DNA of 64,000 nucleotides, taken from assembly GCA_002269645.1 (NCBI GenBank), contig NIVC01000110.1:372001-436000 (forward strand), in the 5' to 3' direction. The position numbers and the translations under genes are program-made. Source of the DNA: Macrostomum lignano. Taxonomy: Eukaryota. This document shows, piece by piece, positions 1 through 23,929 of this stretch (its first letter is position 1; every line of letters begins with the position of its first letter). The notes beneath the pieces are model-generated. The model did not search any database and was not told the origin of the DNA. It worked only from the letters and a program-made list of their open reading frames with translations.

Positions 1-2
1 AC

Positions 3-2372
3 CAGAATTCATTTTTGGACGTAAAAAATCAGCAAGGTCAATTTCAAGGTCAAGATAAAGCAAATGATCTTTATGAGCAGCAGAGACAGTATCTAAATAA
101 TCTTCAGCAGCAGCAGAGAAATCCACAACAGGATGAACAGCAGAGAGAGCAACAGCAGAGAGAGCAGCAGCAGAGAGAGCAACAGAAGAGAGAGCAGCAG
201 CAGAGAGAGCAACAGCAGAGAGAGCAACAAAAGAGAGAGCAGCAGCAGAGAGAGCAGCAGCAGAGAGAGCAGCAGCAGAGAGAGCAACAGCAGAGAGAGC
301 AACAGCAGAGAGAGCAACAGCAGAGAGAGCAGCAGCAGAGAGCGCAGCAGCAGAGAGAGCAACAGCAGAGAGAGCAACAGAAGAGAGAGCAGCAGCAGAG
401 AGCGCAGCAGCAGAGAGAGCAACAGCAGAGAGAGCAACAGAAGAGAGAGCAGCAGCAGAGAGAGCAACAGCAGAGAGAGCAACAGAAGAGAGAGCAGCAG
501 CAGAGAGAGCAACAGCAGAGAGAGCAACAAAAGAGAGAGCAGCAGCAGAGAGAGCAGCAGCAGAGAGAGCAGCAGCAGAGAGAGCAACAGCAGAGAGAGC
601 AACAACAGAGAGAGCAGAATCGGCAACTACATGAACATCCTGCAACTAATTTTCCGTCAAAAGTAGCCTCTCAAAATTTCCAAGAAAAAAATTCTCAAAG
701 CAGCTGGGTCTGCAAGCACTGCACGCTGCTCAACCCGGCTCCATCGCAGCCAGAAACTGGGCTTAGGATTTGCTCTGCTTGCGCACACACTACCGAACTC
801 AGTGGTGGCGCCACTAAAAGAGGCGCAGTCGCTCGCAGTGAAGCCGCTTCTGCTGCGTCCATGCTGGCCTCCGCAGCCACAGAAGCCGCCAGTGATGCAG
901 TCGGAGCGGCAGGAAGCGAGTCCAGCACAGGTTTTACCGAATGGTCCGATAGAGCTCAAAACCTGGCTTCGCAGCTCAGAGTGGAAGACTGGGTAGCAGA
1001 GAGAGTTCTGGCTGTCAAAAGCATGCCCAAGTTTAACGAGTTTTCCGAATCAGACCTTGTAGTTGCGATTGAGTCGTGTGGCGGCCTGGCGTTCGAAGAC
1101 GATGCTCTGATGAGCCAACTGCGTCGCAAGTGCAGCCGCTGTTCGAATGATTTACCGCGTCACAAACTTGTTGCCATGGCAGCATGCGAGTGCCAGATGT
1201 GTCCAGAGTGTTTTCGAAAATTTCTTCTTGAGCTGAAAAGCAGCAGAATTCAGTGCCCTGTCTGCAAGGATGTGTGCGATGATGAAGACAGTCGGGATTT
1301 CATGAGGATGCAGCTGATGGAAATGGCGGATGTGCTTGGCGCTGACGCTGTGGCGTATGCATTGGCGCGCCTTGAAGATAATTCAAGCAAAAATAGCGAC
1401 GAAGGTTGGGAAGTGGTCGAAGCTCCAGGCAAGAGAGGGAAAAAATCAAAAGCCTCAAAAGATGCCTCGACAGTTCCAGTAAACATTTCGAATGGCTATT
1501 GTCCTCATAGGAATGGTGGACTACCGAAAAGAGACACTCGGCAGTTCGAAAGTCACTGCAAAGTTTGTAAGCAGGATGTATGCAAGAAATGCTTTGGCTT
1601 CTGGACTGATCACCAACGGATGGACTGCAGCAGTTATCGGGTTCATGCAGCAGGTATTAAAAAAGGAGATTATAACAAAATGCACATAGCTGCTCAAAAG
1701 CAAGGCCTCTCGCCTACTGACGCAAACCTGCACGATCAGATGATGGAGCATCTGACTTTTGATTTGGTTTGCCCAGACTGCAGTCTTTGCTACCAGCGAG
1801 TGTCCAAATCTGGAGTTCCTGTGTTTCACTGCAGATGTGGGCATTCATTCTGTCCATTTTGTCGAAGCCCTCAGTTGAGACCTCACGAAGGCTGCCAAAT
1901 TAAAGGAATTCATGTGCACCACCAGCGCCAGTGCTACTTTTATTTGAAGCAAGTAAAACAGACGACTCTACTTGATTTGTTGAGGAGAAATAAGATTAAA
2001 GTAAGCGAAGCATGCTCAAAAGTTAACAAAGCTTGTGAGCTTCCTGATTTGAAGATAGAACGAAAGTTGATTGGTATATATCCTTGTACCGAAAAAGTTA
2101 CTCATAACAAGCCGGGTATATGTGACAGGCACTACCGTGAGTATCTAATTCAGCTCATCAATGCAAACAAGCTCGATTTGGTAGATGTTGCCAATGAGAA
2201 TGAGCTGCTTGAGATGTTCAAAAGGTTTGGTTTGGCCCTGCCAAAAGTAAAAGCCTCCAACCCTGCTACTGCTGCGAGAGAGAAGGTGACAATTTACCGC
2301 GGCCAGCTGAAGAAAATGGTGCCACCGCTGCAGCGTAGCCAAGAGAAAAAAAACTATAGTTTAGGTTATTGA
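3..2372 (+). CDS. RNF31: HOIP/RNF31-like RBR-LDD protein, 5'-partial, with predicted inactive RING2
   Basis: Frame is open from the window edge; the ORF-track start at 15 is a TTG. Domains: QQQRE repeat; NZF-like WVCKHCTLLN..CSAC; RING1 CSRCSNDLPRHKLVAMAACECQMCPECFRK (HOIP: LPHNRMQALTSCECTICPDCFRQ); IBR-like CKVCKQDVCKKCFGFWTDH..C; RING2-like CPDC..FHCRCGHSFCPFC; LDD signatures HVHHQRQCYFYLK (HOIP LHGHHPRDCLFYLR) and GICDRHYREYLIQLINANKLD (HOIP GLCQAHYKEYLVSLINAHSLD). Stop TGA at 2370-2372. Confidence 0.88.
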   Translation, partial: QNSFLDVKNQQGQFQGQDKANDLYEQQRQYLNNLQQQQRNPQQDEQQREQQQREQQQREQQKREQQQREQQQREQQKREQQQREQQQREQQQREQQQREQQQREQQQREQQQRAQQQREQQQREQQKREQQQRAQQQREQQQREQQKREQQQREQQQREQQKREQQQREQQQREQQKREQQQREQQQREQQQREQQQREQQQREQNRQLHEHPATNFPSKVASQNFQEKNSQSSWVCKHCTLLNPAPSQPETGLRICSACAHTTELSGGATKRGAVARSEAASAASMLASAATEAASDAVGAAGSESSTGFTEWSDRAQNLASQLRVEDWVAERVLAVKSMPKFNEFSESDLVVAIESCGGLAFEDDALMSQLRRKCSRCSNDLPRHKLVAMAACECQMCPECFRKFLLELKSSRIQCPVCKDVCDDEDSRDFMRMQLMEMADVLGADAVAYALARLEDNSSKNSDEGWEVVEAPGKRGKKSKASKDASTVPVNISNGYCPHRNGGLPKRDTRQFESHCKVCKQDVCKKCFGFWTDHQRMDCSSYRVHAAGIKKGDYNKMHIAAQKQGLSPTDANLHDQMMEHLTFDLVCPDCSLCYQRVSKSGVPVFHCRCGHSFCPFCRSPQLRPHEGCQIKGIHVHHQRQCYFYLKQVKQTTLLDLLRRNKIKVSEACSKVNKACELPDLKIERKLIGIYPCTEKVTHNKPGICDRHYREYLIQLINANKLDLVDVANENELLEMFKRFGLALPKVKASNPATAAREKVTIYRGQLKKMVPPLQRSQEKKNYSLGY
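136..618 (+). repeat. Coding 15-bp tandem repeat (CAGCAGAGAGAGCAR)n encoding about 32 QQQRE units
   Basis: Read directly from the sequence; in frame within the RNF31-like ORF, with a QQKRE variant recurring roughly every third unit. Confidence 0.95.
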
Positions 2373-3739
2373 AACAATCTTGAAACGCGCGTAATGTGGG
2401 AGCGGATATCTGTACTAACACGTTTACTCTTTAAACTACATATGTTCTTAAACAAGCATAAGTATCTTTAATCTTTTTTATTCTCTACATTATCATAAAT
2501 TCCTGCTACCACAAATGATCTTCGAAACTATTTACATTTTTAGTAATGTTATTTCTTGAGCTCACGTTTTAATATTTGATAAATCAACTACTCTGAAGTA
2601 GACAAACATAAAATATATAATTCAAACTCTTTTCAATCTGTCTTTTTTCTTAGAAACAAAGCTACTTCTATGTAAAATTTGACACTTGCCACTTGGCTAC
2701 ACTACTAACGACGTCTCTGAAATATAGCCGGCTTTTTTATTCTGATTTTGATCCCGATGAGTGTCAGTGCTTCCAGTTAATCAAATAATCCAGTTGATAT
2801 ATTAAATGCTGACGTACATACTCTTTCAGTTTCATGTAATGTCATTTCGAATTCAGTAGGTTGAGAAATTCCAATACCAATCTTATCCATCTGTGCTTTA
2901 GCTGTTGTCACGTGCCGAAAGTTTGTTATTATTATTATTTTCTTTTGCTGCTCAATTATCTAACTACGAGTATCTAGCTAGGCTTTCATCAATGCTTATT
3001 CAATCGGATATAATTTCCTATGGTTTCGTTGTTGTAACGTACTTTGTAATGCAATGTTTAATGATTTATTATGAGGAAAAATGCTTTAATAATTGTAGCT
3101 TTGAAATATTGCTATTTTGCTTCCAATTGCTATCTTGAGCATTGATTTACTTGGTTGTTGGTCAAAGTTCTTGGGGATACTTTTTAGGGGGATGCCTGCT
3201 ATCTTTGTGAAGGCTTTATTTTTCTGTTTTTGTTATTTTTAAGAAAAAGATATTTATTGCAAACATCTTTGTCTGTGATAGTTTAACTAGAATATGGTGA
3301 TTTATAAAACTGATAAAGAAATAGGTTCTTAAAAAAATTGGTTTGTAATAGATTTGCATGAATATTTGCTCCTTGCTCATTTGAGCGTCCCGAAGGGGGC
3401 ACTAGATTGCTCTTACTATTTATAATGTTATATGATTACTATAGGTTCCTAATATGCTGGCTTGAGTGATTGGATATTTACTCGGCTATTACTAAATGGT
3501 GGACAACATTAATGTACTTGTCTTTTTATCACATGTTGCTGCGCAGGCAAACTTGCCTTTTATTGCTGCCAATCAGCTACCGGTAAATGTGTCAGATTAA
3601 ATATTTTATTTCACAAATTTTTCTGTAATTTTTTTTCCATGAATGAATTCAAATATACCAGATATTCCAGAACGTGTATTTTAGAATTGACTGCATTGTT
3701 ACTTTGTTTGTTTGTTTTCAATTTAATTTAAATTAAATT

Positions 3740-3845
3740 GGCCTTAAGCATCTGAGCCTTATCATCTGAGCGATTCCCCATGAGCCTTGGTATCTGAGTG
3801 ATTCCCCATGAGCCTTAGCATCTGATCGCAAGCCTTCTGACACTA
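3740..3845. repeat. Short copy of the degenerate ~30-bp satellite (GAGCCTTGACATCTCAGCAATTCCCC family)
   Basis: Units such as tgagccttggtatctgagtgattccccatgagcc match the large array at 36930-39030. Confidence 0.6.
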
Positions 3846-4071
3846 ACTGCCAGAAGCACTAATAAGTCAGAACAGAAACATTTCAGTTATACGCTTGTCT
3901 TATATATTTAGGTAATTAGCCTATCTCCATCAGAGTACTAGTAGTTATGTCATAAAATACACTGGAGTAGTCCCTATGCACGGTACAGTTAATAACATTT
4001 TTTCATTGCTTTTCTTAAAAAACCATAGCCTCAATAATAAAAGTTAATACCTTCATGAAATCCTGCAAAGC

Positions 4072-6375
4072 ATGTCAGAACCCGAGCCGTGCCAATTTTG
4101 CGGCGACGAGCCCGCCAAAAAAGAATGCTCCGTCGCTAGTTGCAGTAGGAAACGGCTGTGCAATAGCTGCGATGACATTTGGCATGGGCATCCTGCCAGG
4201 AAAGATCATCAACGAATCGAGATTCAGCAAAGTGCGACTCATACAGGTTTAAACTCTGGACTATCGAGTGACGGGCGTCAATCTAACTTTCTAACGAAGG
4301 AGCGTGATTCTGGTCAGCCAATGAGAGAGCGCGATTCTGGCCAGCCAATGAGAGAGCGCGATTCTGGCCAGCCAATGAGAGAACACAATTCTGGCCAGCC
4401 AATGAGAGAACGCGATTCTGGCCAGCCAATGAGAGAACGTGATTCTGGTGAGCCAATGAGAGAACGCGATTCTGGCCAGCCAATGAGAGAACACAATTCT
4501 GGCCAGCCAATGAGAGAACGCGATTCGGGCCAGCCAATGAGAGAACGCAATTCTGGCCAGCCAATGAGAGAACGCGATTCTGGACAGCCAATGAGAGAAC
4601 GCGATTCTGGCCAGCCAATGAGAGAACACAATTCTGGTCAGCCAATGAGAGAACGCGATTCTGGTCAGCCAATGGGAGAGCGCAATTTCGGCCAACCAAT
4701 CATAAGTCAACATGTTTATCCTGTCGGCCAGCTGACTGGTATATCTTGGACATGTGCTTATTGCACTACAGTGAATGAATTTAACTGTAACTCTGACACA
4801 ACAAAAAAGGATCGTCTTGCCTGCCAAGTGTGCTCGAAGACCAGCAGCCTGGCGGATATTGTAGAGAGCATCAAGGCTTCAACTGGCAAAGTCCTGTGTG
4901 TACAATGCACATTGCTGAACGACTCACATTTAGTAAAATGTGATGGTTGTGGTGAACCGCTTGATGCTGTTCGTATTCAAGGTGCTTCTTCGGCAGGATC
5001 CCAGCCTTCTGAGTATTCAAGTGGTGGAGCTGTTGCTAATGATTACAACAGACCTTTCTTTGAAGTTGAAACTGCTCATTATAATAGGAGCGGTGATTCT
5101 GCAGGTAATGAAGCTGCTGCTAGAAACACTGATGCGCAGTCTGCAACGAGCAGTGTACCAGATGGTTGTACTGATGGTGATACTTTAGAAGCTGTTCAGT
5201 GTCCGACATGTACCTTTGAAAACCGATTAACTGCCACTGTTTGTGAGATGTGCCATGTTGAAATCCAACCGGCAAGTCATTTGAGCGTTGTAAGGAATAG
5301 GTCATCTGGTGAAGTTGATAGTGAGCGACATCAAATTGATGATACAATTGATAGACTCAGGAATCAGGGCCTTACCTATGAGCAAGCTTGCAGAGCTGTA
5401 TGGGACCAAGTAAATGATCCTTCTGCTAGGCCAACTGAATTCTCAAGTAGCGCCAAGGAAATGGCAGGAGTTGTGCCAGAAAACTCGGAACCAGCGGTCT
5501 CTTTTACTTGCTGTAAATGCCATCACAGGGTTGAGGAGACTGATCCGTTTGAGGTAAAAATTTGCGGCTGCAAAATATGCGTGGACTGTTTTTGGAAAAC
5601 AATAGAACTAATAGAAAAAAATGAATTTTACCTTGGTGACTTCTTTTGCTACTGTGAACGCGCTAGTATTGCGAAAAGAGATCAAAATGAGCATTACGGT
5701 GACGCACGGCTTCAAATTCGCCAAAAGCTCCGTGAGGCAGAATCGGCATCAATCCTTGAGCGCTTCGACCAGAAGCTGTCTATCTGGAGGCGATGGGAGC
5801 GCTTTCCTGATCCATCTGCTGCTGTCAAAGATGCTTTTAAATTTTATTGTTCGAAGTGCCGTCTAGCAAAACACCCACTTGAAAAGATTGATCCTCCGAC
5901 ATGCTCTTGTTCTCTGTGCCAAGATTGCTTTTCCACTGATGTTTTTCGTAAGCTGGTCAATAGATGCCATGACAAGTATGAAATAAAGTGTCCGGTATGT
6001 TTTGGATGCTTTATTTTAGGTACTTCTGCCTGCTCTGAACATGCTAAATGGTTGGAAGATTGCATCTGGGGATGCAAATCAACAAACTGGTCTGTTCCTG
6101 ACCGAAGAACTGCTGCTAATCACCTGCGATTGTTGGTCGGCAATCCTGGTTCTTCTGTTGCTTCTGGCGGTCTTCGTCTAGGTGATTTCCGCAGTGAATA
6201 TTTGCATCGCGATTTGCCGCAAAATTCAAGTCTGCAGTTGGTTGGAGATTGTGGGCACGGATTGAGACCGGCAAACAACGGCTACCTTTGGTGCATTCAA
6301 TGTGTCAAATTTGCCTGTCCTACTTGCAAGCGAGTAATTTACACTTCGACATTCCTACACAAATGTATGTATTAA
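4072..6375 (+). CDS. HOIP-related B-box/NZF/RING1-like/IBR-like zinc-finger protein (767 aa), no RING2
   Basis: ATG 4072 to TAA 6375, uninterrupted. B-box CQFC..LCNSCDDIWHGHPARKDH (HOIP LCPACDHLFHGHPSRAHH); three NZFs including QCPTCTFENRLTATVCEMC; two RING1-like modules (CCKC..CGCKICVDC and CSKC..CSCSLCQDC..CPVC); terminal IBR-like CIQC..CPTC..HKC. Confidence 0.85.
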   Translation: MSEPEPCQFCGDEPAKKECSVASCSRKRLCNSCDDIWHGHPARKDHQRIEIQQSATHTGLNSGLSSDGRQSNFLTKERDSGQPMRERDSGQPMRERDSGQPMREHNSGQPMRERDSGQPMRERDSGEPMRERDSGQPMREHNSGQPMRERDSGQPMRERNSGQPMRERDSGQPMRERDSGQPMREHNSGQPMRERDSGQPMGERNFGQPIISQHVYPVGQLTGISWTCAYCTTVNEFNCNSDTTKKDRLACQVCSKTSSLADIVESIKASTGKVLCVQCTLLNDSHLVKCDGCGEPLDAVRIQGASSAGSQPSEYSSGGAVANDYNRPFFEVETAHYNRSGDSAGNEAAARNTDAQSATSSVPDGCTDGDTLEAVQCPTCTFENRLTATVCEMCHVEIQPASHLSVVRNRSSGEVDSERHQIDDTIDRLRNQGLTYEQACRAVWDQVNDPSARPTEFSSSAKEMAGVVPENSEPAVSFTCCKCHHRVEETDPFEVKICGCKICVDCFWKTIELIEKNEFYLGDFFCYCERASIAKRDQNEHYGDARLQIRQKLREAESASILERFDQKLSIWRRWERFPDPSAAVKDAFKFYCSKCRLAKHPLEKIDPPTCSCSLCQDCFSTDVFRKLVNRCHDKYEIKCPVCFGCFILGTSACSEHAKWLEDCIWGCKSTNWSVPDRRTAANHLRLLVGNPGSSVASGGLRLGDFRSEYLHRDLPQNSSLQLVGDCGHGLRPANNGYLWCIQCVKFACPTCKRVIYTSTFLHKCMY
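4303..4700 (+). repeat. Coding 27-bp tandem repeat (RERDSGQPM), 14 full units plus one partial
   Basis: Unit GGCCAGCCAATGAGAGAACGCGATTCT recurs at 27-nt spacing from 4312 to 4690. Confidence 0.95.
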
Positions 6376-8067
6376 CTTTTAAGACTAGATACTTTTGATG
6401 TGATCACTTGAACACATATACTGTGCATGCATGATATTTAATAAGCAATGTTATATTTTGATTACTTATCTAAGAACTCGCTATATATCGGTTGTTATTC
6501 TATTGGTAACTTTATAGCTTCTATAATCAAATAATGAATGAAATATTTAAACTAAAAAACATGTAAGCTTCTACTCTGTATAGTTATATCTTATTAAGTA
6601 AACGATGTTAAAGCAAAAAAATAATCAGCCCCCAAAGCCTGCTATCCAGCCTAAAATATCAGCATCCCCTATCAGTTTTGGCGTCAAAGCCTCAATTTAA
6701 GCCGTCTTTAACCCAAACTCTCTCTTTGATCTGTGAGTTCCTTTGGCTTGGCCTAACAACAACTTTCAATTGATCATGCGCAAATGGCTAGCACTAAATG
6801 AACCATTTTTTTGCAAAAACTTGAGAAAACCTTTCTTATGTAACGAAAGCAAGTTTCTATAATTAATTTCTAATGCAATTTGAAGTATAATTAGTTTGTT
6901 ATTATTTTCTCATTTCTACGAACATTATCGGCACGTTGTTTGAATTTGTTGCTTTTTGAGTGTTGGTCAACTTTAATTAAACGCCTTGTTGTTATAAATG
7001 AGACTTATTTTTTAAATACGTGAGATGCGCGTTATATTGTAGTAAATAATTCATATGTGTTGTATAATCGATTAATGCCTACTTGTCGGCTGTGTGAAAA
7101 TTTTTATCCAGAGGAATTGTTCCTTTTTTTATTCTAAGCCTAGTGTTCTGTTACAGTGCCTGTCCCTGGTGAGACTTCACGCAGTAAAATAGATATTATT
7201 TATCGTTTTCCTATATCCACTATAGATTTATTAGCAGTAGTTTTTTCTATTTTTATTAAAAAAAACGTTGCATTATGTATTTTAGACACAAATGCGTTTT
7301 GTCCTTCTCATTTTGCAATATATTGACGCGTAGGAATTGTATCTGCCGATCATATTAATTCTCTGTGAAAGTACCATATTCTAAGTAGTAGGTGTTATCT
7401 TTCGTACCTGTGTCACTAAAATCTGTTCATAAAAGTGCTAATTAAGCTTGGAGGACCGATATCAGCCCAACGCCCTAAGTGCCCTTTTTGTATTCTTCAT
7501 CTAGCTTTTGAGTCCCTTATTGAGTTCCTCAGCGCCAAAGCACACCATCTCCTTACCCAGATGTAATTTTGATCACACCAGCCTCACCTTGTAGCCCTTA
7601 TACTCGTTACATTCTATTTTTCTGCCCTGACCTTTCTCTGAAAAATAGATATTATTTTCAAAAAAATCGCGCTCTTTACTATCACTTTCACGACTACGAG
7701 CGTATTCTTGAGTTATTGTGTTCCTCTGCTACTCTCGAAAGCACGAGTCGGAGCTCCCACTAATGGAGTCGCAGCTTCTGCCAGAGTTCATCTACTGATA
7801 AGTAGACAGTATAGAGTGTGGCGCAAAAAGCTTGCGCTGTGGGCAAAGAAATGTTGCGGTATGAGAGACGTGAATCGTTCTGATCAGCCTAGCTAGTGGG
7901 GGGAGTCTAGCCTTGCACAGGGCAGAGGGCAGCAACCTGTCCTGGCAGTATCATTTCGGTTTGACTCCACTTTTAGCCATCTGGCAGCTCCCCAAGTAGG
8001 TCTAGTTGTAGACAATCGCTACAGTGACAATATGTTCTAATTTTTATTCAACTCACTTCAGCTCAGA

Positions 8068-11000
8068 ATGGCCGCTCGAGCTGGCCCAAGTCTGTGCCAC
8101 ATCTGCTTTCGCAACACTGGCAGCTTCAAGTGCATCGATGCCGAGTGTCGTTACGGCTTCATGTGCAGACTGTGTTACCAGCTGCGTCACGGAGACTTGA
8201 ATCATAAGGTTGTGGAGCTGAAGCTGCCCTCTGCATTGGACCGCTGCGACCCAGTCGTGGCTGAGCGATTCTACCAGCTCAAAGATCTGGTCGAGTTCAA
8301 AGAGTTCAACGACTCTGATCTCATCAATGCGATTCAGAACAGCGATTTTGCCTGCTTTGACATTGCTGAGCTGCTTAGCAAGCTGAAATGCAGGTGCAGC
8401 AAGTGCAACAATGAGATGCCACAACTGAAGCTGACTAGCATGAGTAGCTGCGGCTGTGAGCTGTGCTCAGCTTGTTTTGGCAGCTTCGTGCGATCTCTGC
8501 CCAGCCGCTTGGAATGTCAGGTGTGCGGAGTGGCGTGGACTGGCGATTTTGAGGCTCGCGAGTTGATGAAGATTCAAGTGCTCGAGTTGGAGTCTGAGAT
8601 CGGAGTTGACGAGACTAACAGAATGCTTCAGTTGCTGGACGAGTGGGACGATACCTCTGATGTACAGTCTGCAACAAGCAATGGGCTGAATGGATGTACT
8701 GATGGTGGTACTTTAGAAGCCGGTCAGTGCCCGAGATGTACTTTAGAAAATCCATTAACTGTCACTGTTTGTGAGATGCACATTGAAAGTTCCGGTCAGC
8801 CAATGAGAAAAAGCAATTCTGGACAGCTAATAGGAGAATGCGATTCTGGCCAGCCAATGAGAGAGCGCAATTCTGACCAGCCAATTAAAGAGCGCGATTC
8901 TGGCCAGCCAATAAAAGAACGAGATTCTGGTCAGCCAATGAGAGAGTGCAATTCTGACCAGCCAATTGGAGAGCGCGATTCTGGCCAGCCAATTAGAGAA
9001 CGCGATTCTGGCCAGCCAATGAGAGAACGAGATTCTGGTCAGCCAATGAGAGAACGCGATTCTGGGCAGCCAATGAGAGAACGAGATTCTGGCCAGCCAA
9101 TGAGAGAACACGATTCTAGCCAGCCAATGAGAGAGTGCGATTCTGGCCAGCCAATTGGAGAGCGCTATTCTGGTCAGCCAATGAGAGAATGCGATTCTGG
9201 TCAGCCAATGAGAGTACGCAATTCTGACCAGCCAAAGAAAAAGCGCGCTTCTGGCCAGCCATCGCGAAAACGCAATTTCGGCCAGCCAATGAGAGAACGC
9301 AATTGTGGCCAGCCGATAAGAGAACGCGATTCTGGCCAGCCAGTAATGGTTCAACGTGTTTTTTCTGTCAACCAAACGAAAGAAGGCTTATACGTCAGCC
9401 GTCACAACCCAGTCCAGGTGACTGGTCTAACTTGGACATGTGCTCATTGCACTACAATGAATGAGTTCAGCTGTAACTCTGACACGACAAAAAATTATCG
9501 CCTTACCTGCCAAGTGTGCTCGAAGACCAGCAGCCTGGCGGATGTTGTAGAGAGCGTCAAGGCTTCTACCGGCAAAGTCCTGTGTGTAAAATGCACATTG
9601 CTGAACGACTCGCATTCAGTAAAGTGTAAAGGTTGTGATGAACGGCTTGATGCTGTTCCTATTCAAGGTGCTTCTTCGGCAGGATCCCAGCCCCCGAGTA
9701 TTCAAGTGGTGGAGCTGTCGCTAATGATTACAACAGACCTCTCTGTGGAGCTGAAACTGCTCATTATTATAGAAGCGGTGATTCTGCAGGTCATGAAGCT
9801 GCTGCTAGAAACACTGATGCGCAGTCTGCAACGAGCAGTGTGCCGGATGGTGGTACCGATGCTGAAACTTTAGAAGCTGTTCAGTGTCCGCAGTGTACTT
9901 TAAAAAACTCATTAACTGCCACTTTTTGTGAAGTGTGCAGTTTTGAAATCCAACCGGCAAGTCATTTGAGCGTTGGAAGGAATATGTCACTTACTGAAGT
10001 TTATTTTCAGCGACATCAAATTGACGATAGAATTGATAAACTTATGAGGGATCACGGCCTTTCCTATGAGCAAGCTTGCAGAGCTGCATCGGACCAAGTA
10101 AATGGTACATCTGCCAGGCCAACTGAATTCTCAAATAGCGCCACGGAAATTGGATTTGTGCCAGAAAGTTCGGAACTAGTGGTCTCTTTTACTTGCTGTA
10201 AATGCCGACGCAAGGTTGAGGAGACTGATCCGTTTGAAGTAAAAGTTTGTGGCTGCAAAATATGCGTGGACTGCTTCTGGAAAGCAATCGGACGCAATTA
10301 TTTTGTTCTCGGTGACTTTATTTGCTTCTGTTCGCGTGCTTTTATTGAGAAAAGAATCGAGAATGAGCATTACGAATTTGCACGGCTTCGAATTCAAAGT
10401 ATGCTTGGTGGGGCAGAATCGGCATCAATCCTTGAACGCTTCGATCACGAGCTGTCTATCTGGAGGCGATTGAAGGGCTTTTCTGATCCATCTGCCGCTG
10501 TCAAAGATGATGCTTCTAAATTTTATTGTTCGAACTGCCGTCTAGACATAGACCAACTTTACAAAATTGATTTTCCGACATGCTCTTGTTCTCTGTGCCA
10601 ATATTGCTTTTCCACTTATGTTTTTCGTAAGCTGGTAGATGGATGCCGTGACAAGTTCGACATTCAGTGTCCGGTATGTTATAGATGCGTTTTTGCAAGT
10701 ACTCGTACTTCTGACTGCTCAAAACATGCAAAGTGGTTAGAAGATTGCATCTGGGGAAGCAAATCGACAAACTCGTCTGTTTATAAGCGAAGAATTGCTG
10801 TTCATCACCTGCGATCGTTGGTCGGCAATCCTGGTTCTTCCGTTGCTTCTGCTGGTCATCGTCAAGAAAGTGATTTCCGCAGTGAATCTGTGCCTATGGA
10901 TTTGCCGCAAAATTCAAGTCGGCAGTTGGTTGGAGATTGTGGGCACGGATTGAAACCGGCACGCAAAGGCCATTCGTACCTCTGGTGCAAACAATGTTCG

Positions 11001-11069
11001 AATCTTGCCTGTCCTACTTGCAAGCGAATAATTTACTCTTCGTCACACCCACACAAATGTATGTATTAA
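8068..11069 (+). CDS. Paralogous HOIP-related zinc-finger protein (about 1000 aa if repaired) with a 1-nt frameshift at 9691-9695; pseudogene or assembly error
   Basis: ORFs 8068-9873 and 9840-11069 join when one base is restored at CAG CCCCC GAG (paralog: CAG CCTTCT GAG). The 3' two-thirds are colinear with 4072-6375 and end in the same HKCMY-stop; AATAAA lies at about 11136. Confidence 0.8.
8794..9345 (+). repeat. Coding 27-bp tandem repeat (RERDSGQPM family), about 21 more-diverged units
   Basis: Same unit as 4303-4700 with more substitutions. Confidence 0.93.
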
Positions 11070-11800
11070 CTTTTTTCGACTAGATACTTGTGATCCCTTT
11101 ATCACTTAAATTTACTGTGCATATGCATGGTGTTTAATAAACGTTTATATTTTGAATATTTTTCTTAGAAATCGCTATATTTTGACCCTGAGTTTAGATT
11201 TTTACCCTGTATTGTTAGTATCCCAGGGAAAAAATATCAATCCTGAAAGCCCATCTAGGAGATATACTATCGATGATCTACTTGAAGTAGCCTAAGACAT
11301 CAGCAACCCAAATAACCAATCATTTGGGCTTTAACCCAAACTCTCCCTTTTGATCTGCGAGTTCCTTTGGCTTGGCCTACCAAGAACTTCCAATGGATCA
11401 TGCACAAAAATTTGTAAATGGAATTTTTAAGCAAACGGTCCTTCCATAACTTTCTATAAGAAATGCCTTATGTGAACTGAAATTAGTGAAATATGATTTA
11501 TTTGTTATTCTATTCTTTTTTCTACGTGCATGAACGAACATTATTCACATCGCTTTTATTAACTTTGATGCTTCCTGGGTTTCTAAGACAACTACTTTCA
11601 TGAAACATTTTGTTTTAAATGAGAGCCCTATTTTTATTTTTATTTATGGTGCGTTTTACTCAGTATATTGATTTAGGCCGACTTTTCGGCTTTAAAAACT
11701 TTTACCCAGGGCATGTTGTTCCTTTTTTAATTCTCAACCTGCTTTTCTGTTATAGTGAGCATTCGCTCTCTGACGAGACTTCATGCAGTAGAAAAAAATA

Positions 11801-12192
11801 CAGGGTGTCCCATAAGTAACTTTACAACTTGTTTCGTTAATAACTTTGTTATTAATGCTTGGATCCCAACCAGATTTTAGCATAGGAAAATATATAGAAA
11901 AGGGACTTTTTTACACCAAAAGCATGTTCATATCAGGCCCAGATTTCGCCTGAGACGCTTACCAAAGCCCTGCTGTACTTTTCCGCGGCGGCTGAAGGCC
12001 TGCCTTACAAACGGCGGTGGCCACATCGAAGGACCCTGAACGGACTGTATTTTTTAACGTACGAACATGCTTTTGGTGTCAAAGAAATCCCTTTTCTATA
12101 TATTTTCCTATGCTAAAATCTGGTGGGGATCCAAGCATTAATCACAGAGTTATTCACGAAACAAGTTGTAAAGTTACTTATGGGACACCCTG
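11801..12192. mobile_element. Non-autonomous Tc1/mariner-superfamily element (MITE-like deletion derivative), about 392 bp
   Basis: About 130-bp TIRs (11801 CAGGGTGTCCCATAAGTAACTTTACAAC... and its reverse complement ending 12192); TA on both flanks, with one extra G on the right; absent from the paralogous site near 7190; internal remnant CCTFPRRLKACLTNGGGHIEGP* at 11971-12039. Confidence 0.9.
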
Positions 12193-13739
12193 GTATTATT
12201 TATCTTTTTCTACGGATTCACTATATTTTTCTTAGTAGTTTTTTTCTCTATTTTTGTTGAATAACGTTCCACGATTAGTTTTAGACACAAATGCACTTTG
12301 GCCTTCTTATTTCTTATTTTACTATATATTGACGAGTGGGAATTCCGTTTGCCTCGTATTGAATAGTTATCTGGGGAAGAACCATATTCTAAGAATTAGG
12401 TGCGATCGCTATTTGCTTAAAGAATTCAGCTGGACGCTAAATACCATATTCGCATTTCTCCTCCGGTTTTTTAGTCCCTCATTGAGTTCCTCTGTGTCAA
12501 AGTACGCCACCCTCCTACTACTAATCCTGATGTAAGTTTAATCACATTTGCCTCGCCTTGTAGCCCTAAATTCGTTAAATTCTATTTTTGTCTGCCCTTA
12601 TCTGTCTCTGAAATTATATTTATTTTCGAATGATCTCACGCTTTCCTATGAATTTTACGAATATTCTTGAGTTTTTGTGTTTTTCTGCTACTCTCGAAAG
12701 CACGAGTCGGCGAGCTCCCGACTGGGGGAGAACTGGGGAGTCGCAGCTTCTGTCAGAGTTCACCTACTGATAAGTAGACAGTATAGAGTGTGGTACAAAA
12801 AGCTTGCCCTGCGGGCAAAGAATATAAATGTCTCGGTACGATCGAGTATGAGATTATACTATAAGTAGTTCTGTTCAACTTTAAACAACAAAATTAATAA
12901 TGGTCAAAGTACACCGAAGCGCGTGTACGAGCTATTGATAATATAAAGTATTGATTTGGAGCTTTCTGTTTATTTCACGTATACATATGTATTTTTGTTT
13001 TAAACGAACCAAAAGTTTAGTATGAATAAACGCAAATTTTGTCAGGATCAGAGCCTAGTATTTTTCAACTAAATATTGAGAAGTGTGTTCAAGACTCGGT
13101 GAATTTTTCAAAGAGTGAAGTAGATCGGAAACATGCCGTATATACTACTGTATAAGTAGAATCAAAGTGTCAACGAAGATATCAAAGGATACATGTACAG
13201 TATTAAGGTTATGTCAGCCTTTTAATCCCGGTGACGCCAAAATGACTCGATGGTTGAAGAGATTTAAAGGCAACTAAGATGTGCTCAACTTTGAAAATTT
13301 ATAGTTCAGTTTGTATCGTGTACTTTAATTTACAGAAACAAACCAAAAGATTTATTACACTGCATACATTATAAGAGAAAAACTGGTGTCTTACGCGCAC
13401 TGTAAGAAAAGAGCAATTTCAAGTCAAGGAAGACTGTCTCTCTATATCTATGGCGAGCAAAAACAAGACTACGTGCTACATACATGTACACCAGATTTGC
13501 ACTAGAATTTACTAATGGCCAAATTTTGTCTACGGGACATAATACTATCCTTTACAGTAGCTTACGCGCAAATGTTTAAACTCCCAATTATGCGACAAAA
13601 CGAAGCATATTCTGTAAATTTTCTATGTTCCGCTGCGCACTTTTTGAATTTAAATAAACAAAAGAGTAAACCAAAAGTTTTGTTTTTAAATAGTCACAGA
13701 TGAATTTTATTAATGGTTACGAGGGTAGAGATAGTTATA

Positions 13740-14982
13740 TTCGGTTGTCAAGAAAGTTCCCGGCAATTCTCGAAAATTCTACGGCGCAGTTTAATGGAAA
13801 GTTCTAGAAACCTGGCGCATGTGGGTATATATAGGGGGTGTGAGTGTGCATATTTTCCAGCTTTTCACTCATCCAGCGACTATTAACATGGCAGCAAATA
13901 AGTTACTGCAAAAATCTTCTATTCGCATTTGCTTACTGTATGACTTTAAATCTGGCCTGAGCGGCACCGAATCCAGTCGCCGTATCAATGCTGCATTCGG
14001 CGAAGGTACCGTGTCTGTGTCAACAACCAACGACTGGTTTCGACGATTCCGCGCTGGCGACGAATCCATCGAAGATCAGCCACGATCGGGTAGGCCTTCC
14101 AAAGTTGATGACGAAGAAATCGGCGCCATGGTGGAAGCTGACCGCATCTGACAACACGTGAAATAGCGGCTACCCTTGGGGTGTCTCATACAACCGTATT
14201 CAACAAACTGCGTGCCATTGGCAAGGTTTCAAAACTCGACAAGTGGGTGCCCCACGACCTCAGCAACTTTGACCGTCAGCGGCGGGCGGAGGCGGCAACT
14301 TCATTGCTCTCGTTCCGGCGTACCACAGCTTGGCTGGAGTCCACTGTGACTGGAGATGAGAAATGGGTGCTCTACGTCAATGAGAAGCGCCGACAATCTT
14401 GGGTCTCTGAGAATCAACCACCGCAGCATCATCCGAAACCGGAGTTGCAGGGTCATGCTGTCTGTATGGTGGGACAGCAAAGGTATCCTGTACTACGAGC
14501 TGCTTCCTCGCAACACCACCGTCACAGCCGAGGTCTACTGCCAACAACTGCAGAAGGTGGCTGAGAAAATCGACGAACTGCGTCCAGGGCACGGCAAAGT
14601 TCGTTTCCTTCACGACAACGCCCGACCACATACGGCTAAGGTGACCCGCCAGAAATTGCTGCAACTGGGGTGGGAGATTCTCCCACACCCACCATATTCT
14701 CCCGACCTTGCACCATCCGATTACCACCTGTTTCGGCCATGAGCAACAGCTTGCGCGGTCAGAGCTTTGTTGATGACAATGAAGTCAATCAATGGCTCAA
14801 AAACTTCTTAAATCGAAGCCAGCTAGTTTCTATAGTGATGGTATCAAAAGTCTGCCAGAAAAATGGCAGAAGGTCATTGACCCAGATGGGGACTATTTTG
14901 ATATTTGATGCGATTCAGCATTTAAAAAAACTCGGGCTGATGGAACATTGTAGAATTGCCAGGAACTTTCTTGACAACCGAA
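13740..14982 (+). mobile_element. Full-length mariner (DD34D) DNA transposon, 1243 bp
   Basis: 31-bp TIRs TTCGGTTGTCAAGAAAGTTCC(C/T)GGCAATTCT with one mismatch; TA at 13738-39 and 14983-84. Confidence 0.95.
13888..14908 (+). pseudogene. Mariner transposase with four frameshifts
   Basis: HTH region WFRRFRAGDESIEDQPRSGRP, linker WVPHDL, catalytic TGDEKW / HDNARPH / YSPDLAPSDYHLF. Frame breaks near 14146, 14450, 14738 and 14808; repaired C-terminus ...LPEKWQKVIDPDGDYFDI*. Confidence 0.93.
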
Positions 14983-16263
14983 TATTGTCGTGGGCTCTTG
15001 ACAACAAATTATTTAAAACAAATACTTCGTACAACTGGAATAGTTACGAATATCTTTCAAATGGAATCAGTTTTTTATCGTGACTATTTTTACAGGAACT
15101 GTTTGTATAGACAGTAAGCTTTTCTAAAATTAGGACTAGGATATATACTGTTTTTGATTCGATCAGAAAGCAACCAAGTACTTTTTTTCAGTGCAATGGC
15201 ACTCATGGGAGAAGTTGTTATAGTTGCTAATCAATGCATGTATTTATTAAATTTTCTAGTTTATTAATTATCAAAGTCGCAGGGTTTGATAAATCTACAA
15301 CTCAGTTTTCTTCAAAACCGAATCAATACTTCTAAGGGAGATTGTAAAATACCTAATAAAGAGACAAGTATAGAGAAACTTCTATCTATCAATTTATAGC
15401 ATCCACCAGCAGCAGCCACATGCTGATATTCAAAATCCTCTCATAAACTGCGCGCTCTTGCCATTAAGACTGGTGGAGTAGACAGGCTATGGGGCTTGGC
15501 TATATAAGAGATTTCAGTTGGAAGAAATCTGTGCCAAGGAATTCTAGAACTAAGAAACTGGAATACCAGCTGGAAGCTGCACCATCAGATAAAATCCGTC
15601 AATAAAAACAATTCCTTGTTTTGCAGTTAATCTCACGGAAAAAATCGCTTAAAATTTTGAATTTAAGTTTAAAATAAAAACTTAATTTTAAATTTTATTT
15701 AAAAATCTCATGTGTTTTCTTTGTTGAGATTTCGGAATGTTTTAAAATTTGATTCACAACAATAAAAATTGTAATCAGGCACAGCAATTCGCCTTTCTGC
15801 TCGCCTATAGTTGCTATTCCAGACTCTTAGTTCCAGAACTCCTTGGCCTGGGACTGCACAGGCATATCGATTGTCTTCAATCCCTTCTGGACTGCTGCCA
15901 GATAGTTGGTTGGTTCTGCTCTGCATGCCCTGCCTTTTGAGTCCCCGAAGGGCATCCGATAGCTGCTGGGACGGTTAGATGCAGGCGAAAACTCTGTGTT
16001 CGTCTCATGCAGACATGCAGCTAGATGATGCTTTTCTTCTGCCTCAGAATCTGCCTCCCTGTCTCACAGGGCAGCCATGGTTCTTCGTTTTCAATATTTT
16101 GAATCAACGACTCTCGCACTTCTGTAAATACTATGCTATCGAATCTTTGTGAGTCTCTATATACAGCGGCACCCTTTGTAAGTCTCTTGTCATATGCAGT
16201 TATTTGATATACTGTCATCCTGTGTGTCTTTTCCGCCAGGCCTGTCCGTATTCAGAGTTTGTA

Positions 16264-16675
<412 letters not shown>

Positions 16676-23883: not shown

Positions 23884-23929
23884 GTGAGTCTGTCAATCTT
23901 TTCAGGAGTTAGGGTGGGCAGTCTCGGAA

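What the first reader, a model, noticed from the sequence alone, without database searches (positions are those of the whole stretch)
3..11069. Tandem cluster of three HOIP/RNF31-derived genes, none with an RBR catalytic cysteine: a candidate pseudo-LUBAC family
Seen: gene 1 carries HOIP's C-terminal half (NZF, pre-RING helix, RING1, IBR, RING2, LDD). Genes 2 and 3 carry HOIP's N-terminal B-box and NZFs plus RING1-like modules and stop right after an IBR-like domain. All three are uninterrupted over 2.3-3 kb and have expanded internal coding repeats. Known: HOIP is the catalytic subunit of LUBAC, making Met1-linked ubiquitin through RING2 Cys885/His887 and the LDD, and is usually single-copy. 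Inference: this is a lineage-specific expansion that keeps E2- and ubiquitin-binding modules but has lost catalysis, so the proteins could act as decoys, dominant-negative regulators or scaffolds of linear-ubiquitin/NF-kB-type innate signalling. The lack of introns hints at retroposition before tandem duplication.
Basis: partly seen in the sequence, partly recalled or inferred. Interest (0 to 1): 0.8.

Follow-up and report, generated by a model that had tools for sequence, protein, structure and literature searches.

The report
Catalytically dead HOIP paralogs in a flatworm
In the flatworm Macrostomum lignano, three tandem genes copied from the linear-ubiquitin ligase HOIP keep its zinc-finger folds but have lost the residues that do the chemistry, and they lie just downstream of intact HOIP genes, so they are probably non-catalytic partners or competitors of the active enzyme.

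Summary
The window is Macrostomum lignano DNA (NIVC01000110.1, about 372001-436000). The three HOIP-related genes are real.

- **Gene 1** is cut by the window edge. The full ORF is 998 aa: B-box, NZF, QQQRE repeats, NZF, UBA, RING1, IBR, RING2, LDD. It keeps 26 of 27 zinc ligands. All four functional residues are replaced (C885V, H887V, R935K, D936Q); these are invariant in 29 of 29 other HOIPs. Its dN/dS is 0.5-0.6.
- **Genes 2 and 3** carry the HOIP-type B-box, NZFs, two RING1-like modules and an IBR-like tail. They have no RING2 or LDD. They evolve almost neutrally (dN/dS 0.7-0.9), yet their ORFs and cysteines are maintained.

- Gene 3 is broken by a 1-bp deletion at 9690-9694.
- The cluster is larger. 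Two catalytically intact HOIP genes lie 4.7-9 kb upstream of gene 1.
- A second cluster repeats the order intact, dead, RING2-less.
- A canonical multi-exon HOIP also exists.

Verdict: a lineage-specific HOIP expansion that includes pseudo-ligases. I found no paper describing it. Its function is inferred, not shown.

The parts
3..2372 (+). Gene 1: the 3' 2.37 kb of a 998-aa intronless HOIP paralog. Its ATG lies 625 nt upstream of the window. It is a catalytically dead pseudo-HOIP.
   Evidence: ORF. PDB RNF31 E=1.8e-21. AF2 model pLDDT 73; the top 18 Foldseek hits are all HOIP.
136..616 (+). Gene 1 coding tandem repeat, 15 bp x32 (QQQRE)n.
   Evidence: TRF. Similar E/Q/R-rich repeats occur in the canonical Mlig HOIP P0141.
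705..782 (+). Gene 1 NZF-type zinc finger (WVCKHCTLLN...CSAC).
   Evidence: Pattern. Weak Pfam Vps36-NZF-N hit, E=0.019, below the curated threshold.
978..1265 (+). Gene 1 UBA-like helical region (978-1130) and RING1 (1131-1265). All 8 RING1 zinc ligands are kept.
   Evidence: AF2 pLDDT 85-96 over this region.
1500..1628 (+). Gene 1 IBR. It keeps 7 of 8 ligands. The first pair reads C-x-H instead of C-x2-C.
1770..1862 (+). Gene 1 RING2 with all 6 zinc ligands. The C885 equivalent is Val (1815-1817) and the H887 equivalent is Val (1821-1823).
   Evidence: The same holds in four homeologous or paralogous copies.
1911..2369 (+). Gene 1 LDD. Its zinc ligands are kept. The acceptor-ubiquitin residues R935 and D936 are replaced by K and Q (1947-1952).
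   Evidence: Foldseek TM 0.70-0.75 to HOIP RING2-LDD structures. Residue roles are from PMC7125101.
4072..6375 (+). Gene 2: an intact 767-aa ORF. Layout is B-box, 9-aa repeats, 3 NZF, helix, RING1-like a, RING1-like b, IBR-like tail. It has no RING2 or LDD.
   Evidence: The annotated gene model is transcript-based.
4090..4209 (+). Gene 2 HOIP-type B-box zinc finger.
   Evidence: 63% identical to the gene 1 B-box. The family HMM hits the N-terminal finger of metazoan HOIPs.
4306..4700 (+). Gene 2 coding tandem repeat, 27 bp x14.6 (RERDSGQPM)n.
4753..5253 (+). Gene 2 region with three NZF-pattern fingers (4753-4833, 4897-4950, 5200-5253). The last one carries the canonical T-F dipeptide.
   Evidence: Pfam Zn_ribbon_RanBP E=0.0013, below the curated threshold.
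5506..6009 (+). Gene 2 RING1-like module a plus its helix (5506-5790), and RING1-like module b (about 5812-6009).
   Evidence: hhalign against a HOIP RBR-LDD profile: 89% (E=2.2e-6) and 55% (E=1.2e-4). PDB 7v8f HOIP RING1 was the only hit, E=0.25.
6250..6366 (+). Gene 2 C-terminal Cys/His tail (C-x-H ... C-x2-C-x4-C-x2-C ... H-x-C). It has an IBR-like pattern and no candidate catalytic Cys.
   Evidence: It matches the same regular expression as gene 1's bona fide IBR. No profile match is significant.
8068..11069 (+). Gene 3: about 1000 codons in two frames (8068..9873 and 9840..11069). It is a mosaic: a variant B-box plus UBA plus RING1 at the N-terminus, followed by a gene-2-like body.
9690..9694 (+). 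Gene 3 frameshift site, a C5 homopolymer. The homeolog has C6 and gene 2 has CCTTCT. It is either a real disabling mutation or a long-read assembly error.
8242..8643 (+). Gene 3 N-terminal UBA+RING1 module, gene-1-like and P0001-like.
   Evidence: 35% identity to gene 1, E=7e-24. 44.6% identity to the P0001-type N-terminus, E=8e-51.
8790..9342 (+). Gene 3 coding tandem repeat, 27 bp x20.5.
10194..11060 (+). Gene 3 RING1-like a (10194-10331), RING1-like b (10527-10688) and IBR-like tail (10938-11060).
   Evidence: Alignment with gene 2.

Best explanation
The window holds the distal part of a tandem, same-strand cluster of HOIP (RNF31) paralogs in Macrostomum lignano. The cluster begins upstream of the window with catalytically intact, compact HOIP genes (HOIP_B and HOIP_A).

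Gene 1 is a full-architecture HOIP copy: B-box, NZF, charged repeats, NZF, UBA, RING1, IBR, RING2, LDD. It still folds like HOIP. It has lost the thioester cysteine, the general-base histidine and the two LDD residues that position acceptor ubiquitin. By the canonical RBR mechanism it cannot make Met1-linked chains.

Genes 2 and 3 are further-reduced derivatives. They keep the B-box, NZFs, duplicated RING1-like modules and an IBR-like tail.

The most likely function is non-catalytic. These would be ubiquitin- and E2-binding pseudo-ligases that modulate the neighbouring active HOIPs or read their products. They could act as partners, competitors or scaffolds, and they appear to evolve fast under diversifying or relaxed selection.

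Shown here: homology, architecture, residue losses, ORF and cysteine maintenance, the presence of intact paralogs, and transcript-based gene models.
Inferred: loss of activity, ubiquitin and E2 binding, and a regulatory role in Met1-ubiquitin signalling.
For: - Gene 1 against human RNF31 RBR-LDD: E=1.8e-21. AF2 model pLDDT 73. The best 18 Foldseek hits are all HOIP, with TM 0.70-0.75 on RING2-LDD.
- Residue table: 26 of 27 zinc ligands kept. C885->V/Y, H887->V, R935->K, D936->Q/H in all four gene-1-class sequences. All four positions are invariant in 29 of 29 other HOIPs.
- 135 of 141 HOIP representatives have GGCxH.
- Residue roles come from PMC8589444 and PMC7125101.
- Gene 1 dN/dS is 0.50-0.61 and significantly below 1 (Fisher p=0.0005 and 0.004).
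- Random substitution at the observed divergence leaves the ORF open in 0.1% or fewer of simulations for genes 1 and 2.
- In the genes 2/3 C-terminus, 25 of 29 Cys are invariant against 141 of 321 other residues (p=9e-6).
- Intact HOIP_A lies 4.7 kb upstream: E=7.6e-87, GGCMHFTC, dN/dS 0.15.
- The same gene order recurs on three homeologous contigs. A second cluster has the order intact HOIP (P0141), dead P0008, RING2-less 803-aa protein.
- The dead classes group together in a neighbour-joining tree and share an SKS motif. This suggests one old inactivation event.
- Gene models in this assembly derive from RNA-seq (PMC5730564).
Against: - No biochemical or expression data specific to these copies were available. 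Three supplement searches found none of the gene IDs.
- Gene 2 has dN/dS 0.86-0.94, not distinguishable from neutrality.
- Gene 3 is frameshifted here and carries a nonsense codon in the nearly identical homeolog.
- Pfam recognises no RING, IBR or LDD in the three window proteins.
- The AF2 model of the gene 2 C-terminus was unusable, pLDDT 39.
- A conserved extra cysteine (CPDCSLCYQ, 3 residues after the second RING2 ligand) is present in all gene-1 copies. I could not place it in 3D.
- Whether M. lignano has HOIL-1L, SHARPIN or OTULIN was not checked.
Confidence: 0.6

Rival explanations
1. The three genes are redundant duplicates decaying towards pseudogenes in a recently polyploidised, highly duplicated genome. 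Loss of the catalytic residues would be one step in that decay and would carry no new function.
For: - Gene 2 dN/dS is 0.86-0.94 (p about 0.7 against neutrality).
- Gene 3 has a frameshift here and a nonsense codon in the near-identical c691 copy.
- Gene 1 dN/dS (0.5-0.6) is well above that of intact HOIP_A (0.15).
- The assembly holds 180-312 Mb of duplicated sequence (PMC5730564).
Against: - Gene 1 and gene 2 ORFs of 700-1000 codons are open in all three or four copies despite 9-16% divergence. Simulated probability is 0.001 or less.
- Zinc ligands are selectively conserved.
- Exactly the four functional residues changed, while 26 of 27 structural ones did not.
- The dead lineage is old. Gene 1 and P0008 are about 29% identical and both remain intact.
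- The c762 copy of gene 3 is an intact 1049-aa ORF.
Confidence: 0.2
2. Gene 1 (and perhaps genes 2 and 3) is still an active E3 working through a non-canonical route. It could use the extra conserved cysteine in RING2 (CPDCSLCYQ), or RING1 could act as a classical RING that promotes direct E2-to-substrate transfer.
For: - A cysteine 3 residues after the second RING2 ligand is conserved in all gene-1-class copies. P0008 has one 2 residues after it.
- The RING1 ligands are intact and predicted with high confidence.
Against: - In the alignment to human HOIP this cysteine falls on S877, not in the catalytic loop.
- H887, R935 and D936 are also lost. That argues against any Met1-specific transfer.
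- From general knowledge, RBR RING1 domains hold E2~Ub in an open conformation and do not stimulate direct discharge.
Confidence: 0.08
3. The genes have been neofunctionalised away from ubiquitin signalling. For example, they could be fast-evolving zinc-finger and repeat proteins in reproduction or pathogen recognition, where the HOIP-derived folds serve only as binding scaffolds.
For: - High dN/dS, variable repeat copy number, mosaic identity between homeologs and domain shuffling (the gene 3 N-terminus comes from the P0001 type) fit an arms-race or reproductive gene family.
- Rapid evolution of reproduction-related genes is documented in Macrostomum (PMC7336406, seen).
Against: - The genes remain physically linked to active HOIPs in two independent clusters.
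- They retain NZF fingers, one with the canonical ubiquitin-binding T-F dipeptide.
- None of the gene IDs appears in the region-specific or differential-expression supplements I could search.
Confidence: 0.12

Closest known systems
Human HOIP/RNF31 (the LUBAC catalytic subunit) and its invertebrate homologs such as Drosophila LUBEL
   Same: Gene 1 shares the B-box zinc finger, NZFs, UBA-like region, RING1-IBR-RING2 scaffold and the HOIP-specific LDD. All best sequence and fold hits are RNF31.
   Different: - C885, H887, R935 and D936 are all substituted.
- No PUB domain: the ORF starts 5 residues before the B-box.
- It is intronless.
- It carries (QQQRE)n repeats, although the canonical Mlig HOIP P0141 also has E/Q/R-rich repeats.
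- Genes 2 and 3 lack RING2 and LDD altogether and have a duplicated RING1-like module.
Catalytically intact M. lignano HOIP paralogs: HOIP_A (Mlig033604.g1/g2/g6), HOIP_B, and the canonical multi-exon HOIP P0141 (UniRef A0A1I8H8R9)
   Same: They are in the same cluster and on the same strand. The UBA-RING1 and RING2-LDD regions are homologous. P0141 has the same overall architecture as gene 1.
   Different: They keep GGC[ML]H and, in HOIP_A and P0141, the LRD motif. HOIP_A is strongly conserved: 295 bits to the human protein and dN/dS 0.15, against 79 bits and 0.5-0.6 for gene 1.
Inactive RING partners and pseudo-ligases: BARD1, MDMX and PCGF-type partners (from general knowledge), and the TRIM RING pseudoligases (bioRxiv 10.1101/2024.10.15.614675)
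   Same: The concept is the same: an E3-fold protein that has lost activity but is retained, often working alongside an active paralog.
   Different: Those are RING-type E3s that lose E2 activation. Here an RBR (RING-HECT hybrid) has lost its thioester cysteine. My literature searches found no natural Cys-less HOIP paralog described.
LUBAC accessory subunits HOIL-1L and SHARPIN
   Same: They are NZF-bearing proteins that bind ubiquitin and regulate HOIP. That is the role I propose for genes 1-3.
   Different: No UBL domain was seen in genes 1-3. Their evolutionary origin differs: they are HOIP duplicates. Any interaction with active HOIP is untested.
Other Cys-less HOIP-family representatives: M. 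lignano P0008/P0155 (Mlig012393.g2, Mlig019305.g1), the spider Caerostris/Trichonephila protein P0073 (GGS), and the metagenomic P0139
   Same: All have a HOIP RING2-LDD without the catalytic Cys.
   Different: P0008 is a second, very divergent Macrostomum dead class (about 29% identity to gene 1) and lacks a recognisable IBR. The spider case is a single C->S change with H887 also replaced. None of these is characterised.

Membership tests
HOIP/RNF31 (gene 1) | RING1-IBR-RING2 zinc-ligand scaffold | tested here: met
   26 of 27 ligand positions conserved. PDB RNF31 RBR E=1.8e-21. Foldseek top hits are HOIP RBR. Pfam IBR and RING models do not reach significance.
HOIP/RNF31 (gene 1) | C-terminal linear-ubiquitin-chain determining domain (LDD) | tested here: met
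   The alignment to 4ljo/5edv runs through the LDD. TM 0.70-0.75 and rmsd 3.3-4.6 A to RING2-LDD structures. PF18091 is precomputed on the homeolog fragment P0159 but is not detected on gene 1 itself.
HOIP/RNF31 (gene 1) | Catalytic Cys885 and general-base His887 in RING2 | tested here: not met
   Both are Val in gene 1 (window 1815-1817 and 1821-1823). They are V/Y and V in the paralogs, and C and H in 29 of 29 other HOIPs.
HOIP/RNF31 (gene 1) | Acceptor-ubiquitin contacts Arg935 and Asp936 in the LDD | tested here: not met
   K and Q at 1947-1952. R and D in 29 of 29 other HOIPs. Their role is from PMC7125101.
HOIP/RNF31 (gene 1) | N-terminal HOIP-type B-box zinc finger and NZF fingers | tested here: met
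   The full ORF (L001 10007..13003) starts with CSFCGD...CDQIWHNHPNRKNH and an NZF. The family HMM hits 50 B-box domains in metazoan HOIPs, and 49 of them lie upstream of RING2.
HOIP/RNF31 (gene 1) | PUB domain and UBA that recruit OTULIN/SPATA2 and HOIL-1L/SHARPIN | tested here: inconclusive
   There is no room for a PUB domain, because the ORF starts 5 aa before the B-box. A helical UBA-like region is predicted with pLDDT around 90, but Pfam UBA_HOIP is not detected. Partner proteins were not searched for.
HOIP/RNF31 (gene 1) | Met1-linked polyubiquitin synthesis | not testable with these tools
   This needs an in vitro ubiquitination assay.
RBR E3 ligases (genes 2 and 3) | RING1 | tested here: inconclusive
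   hhalign to HOIP RING1 plus helix: 89% (E=2.2e-6) for module a and 55% (E=1.2e-4) for module b. Gene 3 also has a clear gene-1-like UBA-RING1 module (E=7e-24). Pfam found nothing. The AF2 model was unusable.
RBR E3 ligases (genes 2 and 3) | IBR | tested here: inconclusive
   The tail has the same C-x-H...C-x2-C-x4-C-x2-C...H...C spacing as gene 1's IBR. The best profile match is non-significant and falls on the second half of RING2 (E=0.098).
RBR E3 ligases (genes 2 and 3) | RING2 (Rcat) with a catalytic cysteine | tested here: not met
   Both ORFs stop 2 residues after the last cysteine of the tail. No RING2/LDD-like coding sequence lies downstream or anywhere else in the window at E<10, apart from gene 1 and weak hits inside genes 2 and 3 themselves. 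The homeolog gene model P0005 maps collinearly and shows no added exon.
Pseudoenzyme (pseudo-E3) | Fold retained, catalytic residues lost, sequence kept under selection | tested here: met
   - Gene 1: all three criteria are met.
- Gene 2: ORF and Cys maintenance are met, but dN/dS is about 0.9.
- Gene 3 in this window: frame broken.

The most novel reading that the evidence does not exclude
An active HOIP, a dead full-length HOIP and a RING2-less B-box/NZF protein form a conserved three-gene module. The module is present in two paralogous clusters and may be co-transcribed as one trans-spliced unit. Its products would assemble into a flatworm-specific LUBAC-like complex, with HOIP-derived pseudo-ligases taking the regulatory roles that HOIL-1L and SHARPIN play in vertebrates. 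The fast evolution of the dead subunits would reflect conflict with pathogens that target linear-ubiquitin signalling.
Probability: 0.15. Interest if true: 0.8.

Novelty: new variant of a known kind. Interest (0 to 1): 0.55.

Why it matters
HOIP is the only known ligase dedicated to Met1-linked ubiquitin chains, and it is normally present as one gene. Here the fold is kept while the thioester Cys, the catalytic His and the acceptor-site Arg and Asp are removed together. These are the same positions biochemists mutate to kill the enzyme, so this is a natural experiment. If the dead copies regulate the adjacent active HOIPs, they would be the first natural RBR pseudo-ligases shown to control linear ubiquitination. 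They would also offer an independent evolutionary solution to LUBAC regulation.

M. lignano has RNAi and transgenesis (PMC5730564), so the idea is directly testable. The locus is also a clean example of tandem duplication, domain shuffling and repeat expansion in a neopolyploid genome.

Tried and rejected
1. Pfam on the four window ORFs gave no RING, IBR or LDD hits, only sub-threshold NZF/RanBP matches. Pfam alone would have missed the family.
2. AF2 on the gene 2 C-terminus with a 3-sequence alignment gave pLDDT 39, so I did not run a fold search on it.
3. A profile search of alignment A2 against PDB gave no hits at E<=10.
4. Exact-protein look-ups for expression evidence from other assemblies returned only the NCBI genome contig.
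5. Supplements of three M. lignano expression papers were searched for Mlig033604, Mlig005926, Mlig011956, Mlig012393, Mlig027647 and Mlig019305. None was found.
6. The idea that gene 1 is the species' only HOIP and lost activity in the whole lineage is rejected. Intact HOIP_A, HOIP_B, the 1328-aa ORF and P0141 all exist.
7. The idea that a RING2 exon is spliced onto genes 2 or 3 is rejected within the window.
8. The idea that the gene 3 break is an intron is rejected. The homeolog differs only by C6 against C5, and the flanking sequence is coding and collinear with gene 2.
9. My first whole-gene dN/dS values were inflated by misaligned repeats, so I recomputed them on non-repeat segments.
10. 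The word-index homolog searches were uninformative beyond M. lignano.

Full report
**Origin and coordinates.** The best protein matches to the window's ORFs are Macrostomum lignano proteins (BOX15_Mlig011956g1 and Mlig033604g4, 82-83% identity). The window's own gene models lie on NIVC01000110.1 of assembly GCA_002269645.1. Window position 1 equals position 10632 of locus L001, which is NIVC01000110.1:361370-383689. The window is therefore about 372001-436000 of that contig. It is eukaryotic DNA. Neighbouring genes such as two Cys-loop channel genes are multi-exon.

**Checking the observation.** Four long + strand ORFs occupy the region: 15..2372, 4072..6375, 8068..9873 and 9840..11069. Coding tandem repeats are real:
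- 15 bp x32 at 136-616, encoding QQQRE.
- 27 bp x14.6 at 4306-4700, encoding RERDSGQPM.
- 27 bp x20.5 at 8790-9342.

- Gene 1 is truncated by the window edge. In L001 it is one uninterrupted 998-aa ORF (10007..13003). Its first 213 residues, upstream of the window, carry a B-box zinc finger and an NZF. It is therefore a whole HOIP-like protein, not a C-terminal half.
- Gene 3 is not uninterrupted. Compared with gene 2 and with its own homeolog, it lacks one C in a homopolymer at 9690-9694 (C5 against C6). This shifts the frame. The nearly identical copy on NIVC01000691.1 instead has a GAA->TAA nonsense codon in the repeats. The copy on NIVC01000762.1 is an intact 1049-aa ORF.
- The cluster does not start at gene 1 (see "The wider cluster" below).

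**Gene 1 is a HOIP with its active site removed.** phmmer against all PDB sequences returns only RNF31 entries at the top (5edv RBR-LDD E=1.8e-21, 4ljo RING2-LDD 3.5e-16, 7v8f RING1 1.8e-8). An AlphaFold2 model built on a 33-sequence alignment has mean pLDDT 73. By region, UBA/RING1 scores 85-96 and LDD 82-91. Its best 18 Foldseek hits in the PDB are all HOIP, with TM 0.70-0.75 and rmsd 3.3-4.6 A on RING2-LDD structures. HOIL-1 and RNF216 follow far behind.

A column-by-column table shows that gene 1 and its three paralogs keep 26 of 27 zinc-ligand positions in RING1, IBR, RING2 and LDD. The single exception is IBR ligand 2, where a nearby His gives C-x-H. The four functional positions are all replaced:
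- C885 -> V (Y in one paralog), at window 1815-1817.
- H887 -> V, at window 1821-1823.
- R935 -> K and D936 -> Q (H in one paralog), at window 1947-1952.

Translation is confirmed. All four positions are invariant in 29 of 29 other HOIP homologs in that alignment. In the exhaustive representative search, 135 of 141 HOIP-family proteins with a recognisable RING2 have GGCxH. C885 is the thioester cysteine, and H887 is the base that activates Met1 of acceptor ubiquitin (PMC8589444). R935 and D936 bind acceptor ubiquitin, and alanine substitution abolishes linear ubiquitination (PMC7125101). By the canonical mechanism gene 1 cannot make Met1 chains. This is inferred from sequence, not assayed. One caveat remains. 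A cysteine three residues after the second RING2 ligand (CPDCSLCYQ) is conserved in all gene-1 copies, and I could not place it in three dimensions.

**Genes 2 and 3.** Pfam sees only sub-threshold NZF/RanBP fingers, and the only PDB hit is HOIP RING1 at E=0.25. Family-level comparisons say more.
- The N-terminal finger of gene 2 is 63% identical to gene 1's B-box. An HMM of the Macrostomum B-boxes finds 50 domains in metazoan HOIP/LUBEL proteins, 49 of them upstream of RING2, with the signature CDxxWHxHPxRxxH. This is HOIP's own zinc finger.
- A profile of the genes 2/3 C-terminus was compared by hhalign with a 46-sequence HOIP RBR-LDD profile. Module a (gene 2 aa 479-573) aligns to RING1 plus the following helix at 89% probability (E=2.2e-6). 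Module b (aa 581-645) aligns to RING1 at 55% (E=1.2e-4).
- The C-terminal tail has the same unusual C-x-H...C-x2-C-x4-C-x2-C...H...C spacing as gene 1's bona fide IBR, but no significant profile match. It could equally be a RING2 remnant. Either way it has no candidate catalytic cysteine.
- Gene 3 is a mosaic. Its first 192 residues (variant B-box, UBA, RING1) are 44.6% identical to the N-terminus of another cluster member, the P0001 type (E=8e-51). They are 35% identical to gene 1's UBA-RING1. The rest is gene-2-like (71% identity).
- No RING2/LDD-like coding sequence lies downstream of either gene in the remaining 53 kb. The homeologous transcript-based model P0005 maps collinearly without an extra exon.

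**The wider cluster.** Upstream of the window on the same strand lie three further elements.
- HOIP_B (its end is at L001 898) has an intact GGCLHLTC motif.
- HOIP_A (L001 3657..5258, 533 aa) has the layout NZFx2-UBA-RBR-LDD. It matches human RNF31 RBR-LDD at E=7.6e-87, has GGCMHFTC and FYLRD intact, and passes the Pfam IBR, IBR_1 and E3_UbLigase_RBR thresholds.
- A stand-alone B-box mini-ORF lies between HOIP_A and gene 1.

HOIP_A ends 4.7 kb before gene 1's ATG. The same order (HOIP_B, HOIP_A, mini B-box, gene 1, gene 2, gene 3) recurs on NIVC01000691.1 and NIVC01000762.1. On the former it is preceded by a 1328-aa ORF with two RBRs and by the P0001-type dead gene.

A second cluster on NIVC01001484.1 holds three genes in the same order.
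- The first is a multi-exon canonical HOIP. It corresponds to P0141 (UniRef A0A1I8H8R9, 1169 aa), with B-box, E/Q/R-rich repeats, NZFs, UBA, RBR-LDD and GGGCLHFVC.
- The second is another dead HOIP, P0008 (SKSTADHIAC; the LDD is detected by Pfam).
- The third is an 803-aa protein with B-box, NZFs, a coiled coil and an IBR-like end.

The order intact, dead, RING2-less is therefore present twice. In a neighbour-joining tree the two dead classes group together on long branches, apart from the intact Macrostomum HOIPs. They also share an SKS motif before the lost cysteine. This suggests one old inactivation event, with the usual long-branch caveat. Gene-1-type proteins were found only in M. lignano.

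**Selection.** I used Nei-Gojobori estimates on non-repeat segments between homeologous copies.

| Gene | dN/dS | Note |
|---|---|---|
| HOIP_A | 0.15 | dS 0.037 |
| Gene 1 (post-repeat) | 0.50-0.61 | dS about 0.15; Fisher p=0.0005 and 0.004 against neutrality |
| Gene 3 | 0.68 post-repeat, 0.34 pre-repeat | |
| Gene 2 | 0.86-0.94 | p about 0.7 against neutrality |

Despite this, the gene 1 and gene 2 ORFs are open in every copy. Random substitution at the observed divergence leaves them open in 0.1% or fewer of simulations. In the genes 2/3 C-terminus, 25 of 29 cysteines are invariant against 141 of 321 other residues (p=9e-6). Identity between the homeologous contigs is mosaic along the locus: 94-96% around HOIP_A, 88-91% over gene 1, and 84% or 96% over genes 2 and 3 depending on the contig. 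This points to recombination or gene conversion.

Together this describes proteins whose zinc scaffolds are constrained while their surfaces evolve fast. That pattern fits diversifying selection or relaxed selection, but not plain decay. The window's copy of gene 3 may be an exception, unless the C5 run is a long-read assembly error.

**Expression and introns.** The assembly's gene models derive from RNA-seq (StringTie/TACO plus a de novo transcriptome, with trans-splice and poly(A) evidence; PMC5730564). Models exist for gene 1, gene 2 and their homeologs. In that naming scheme a shared prefix marks one cluster of transcriptional units. HOIP_A (Mlig033604.g1/g2/g6) and the gene 1 homeolog (Mlig033604.g4) share a prefix, which raises the possibility of co-transcription. 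This is a lead only. M. lignano genes average 4.9 introns and the canonical HOIP has introns. The intronless state of the cluster-1 genes is therefore unusual and compatible with a retroposed founder. It applies equally to the intact HOIP_A and HOIP_B.

**Interpretation.** The best-supported reading is a lineage-specific HOIP expansion that produced pseudo-ligases. Gene 1 is a dead full-length HOIP. Genes 2 and 3 are RING2-less derivatives. Retention of NZFs (one with the canonical T-F dipeptide), UBA, RING1 and the LDD fold suggests that they bind ubiquitin, E2~Ub or the active paralogs, and so modulate or read Met1-ubiquitin signalling.

Rival readings are:
- ongoing pseudogenisation, most plausible for gene 3 and to some extent gene 2;
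- residual non-canonical activity;
- neofunctionalisation outside ubiquitin signalling.

I found no paper linking Macrostomum to RNF31, and none describing natural Cys-less HOIP paralogs. A few other uncharacterised Cys-less HOIP-family sequences exist, including one from a spider and one from a metagenome.

**Verdict.** This is a new variant of a known kind, a HOIP-derived pseudo-E3 family. It is moderately interesting and experimentally tractable in this model flatworm.

Noticed in passing
L001:3657-5258 and L001:1-898 (5.4 kb and about 9.7 kb upstream of window position 1, same strand): Two catalytically intact, intronless HOIP genes precede gene 1. HOIP_A is 533 aa with GGCMHFTC. HOIP_B has GGCLHLTC and an extra C-terminal NZF. 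This changes how the window's three genes should be read.
   Followed up: yes
L001:6762-7241 (also annotated as 112-114 aa genes at L002:8482-8826 and L003:3364-3702): A stand-alone HOIP-type B-box mini-ORF lies between HOIP_A and gene 1 and is conserved on three homeologous contigs. It is either a truncated duplicate of gene 1's 5' end or a separate small gene.
   Followed up: partly
L004:904-4890 (NIVC01000691.1): A 1328-aa single ORF contains two complete RBR units, both with an intact GGCLH motif. One is HOIP_B-like and the other HOIP_A-like. They are joined by a long QQQRE/ERE repeat tract. This is either a gene fusion or an assembly chimera.
   Followed up: no
L005 (NIVC01001484.1): 2-3497, 9953-12094, 13672-16083: A second cluster has the same logic as the first. 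It holds a canonical multi-exon HOIP (P0141), the dead HOIP P0008 (no IBR, SKSTADHIAC), and an 803-aa protein with B-box, NZFs, a coiled coil and an IBR-like end.
   Followed up: partly
L001 compared with L002 and L003: Identity between homeologous contigs is mosaic. HOIP_A is identical between two contigs whose gene 1 copies differ by 14% at the protein level. Gene 3 is near-identical between two contigs whose gene 1 copies are 88.6% identical at the DNA level. This suggests recombination or gene conversion, or very uneven evolutionary rates.
   Followed up: partly
window 22904-23887 and 29245-30486 (+): Two tandem paralogous Cys-loop ligand-gated ion channel genes. Each ORF holds Neur_chan_LBD plus the first part of the transmembrane region, and the remainder must lie in further exons.
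   Followed up: partly
window 47855-49078 and 60862-62944 (+): A RING/B-box/coiled-coil ORF is followed by filamin-repeat ORFs. Together they probably form one TRIM-filamin type E3 gene, so another ubiquitin ligase is in the neighbourhood.
   Followed up: partly
window 16204-18031, 20198-22250, 34301-35214, 42338-44258, 57324-58331, 62685-63431: Long simple or tandem repeat tracts give spurious ORFs on both strands. Examples are (CLSV)n and purine-rich GA-type repeats with GC skew 0.74 at 42-44 kb. This fits the repeat-rich M. lignano genome.
   Followed up: no
Gene names: HOIP_A (Mlig033604.g1/g2/g6) and the gene 1 homeolog (Mlig033604.g4) share one transcriptional-unit prefix in the published annotation. 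This hints that the active and the dead HOIP may be co-transcribed and separated by trans-splicing.
   Followed up: partly
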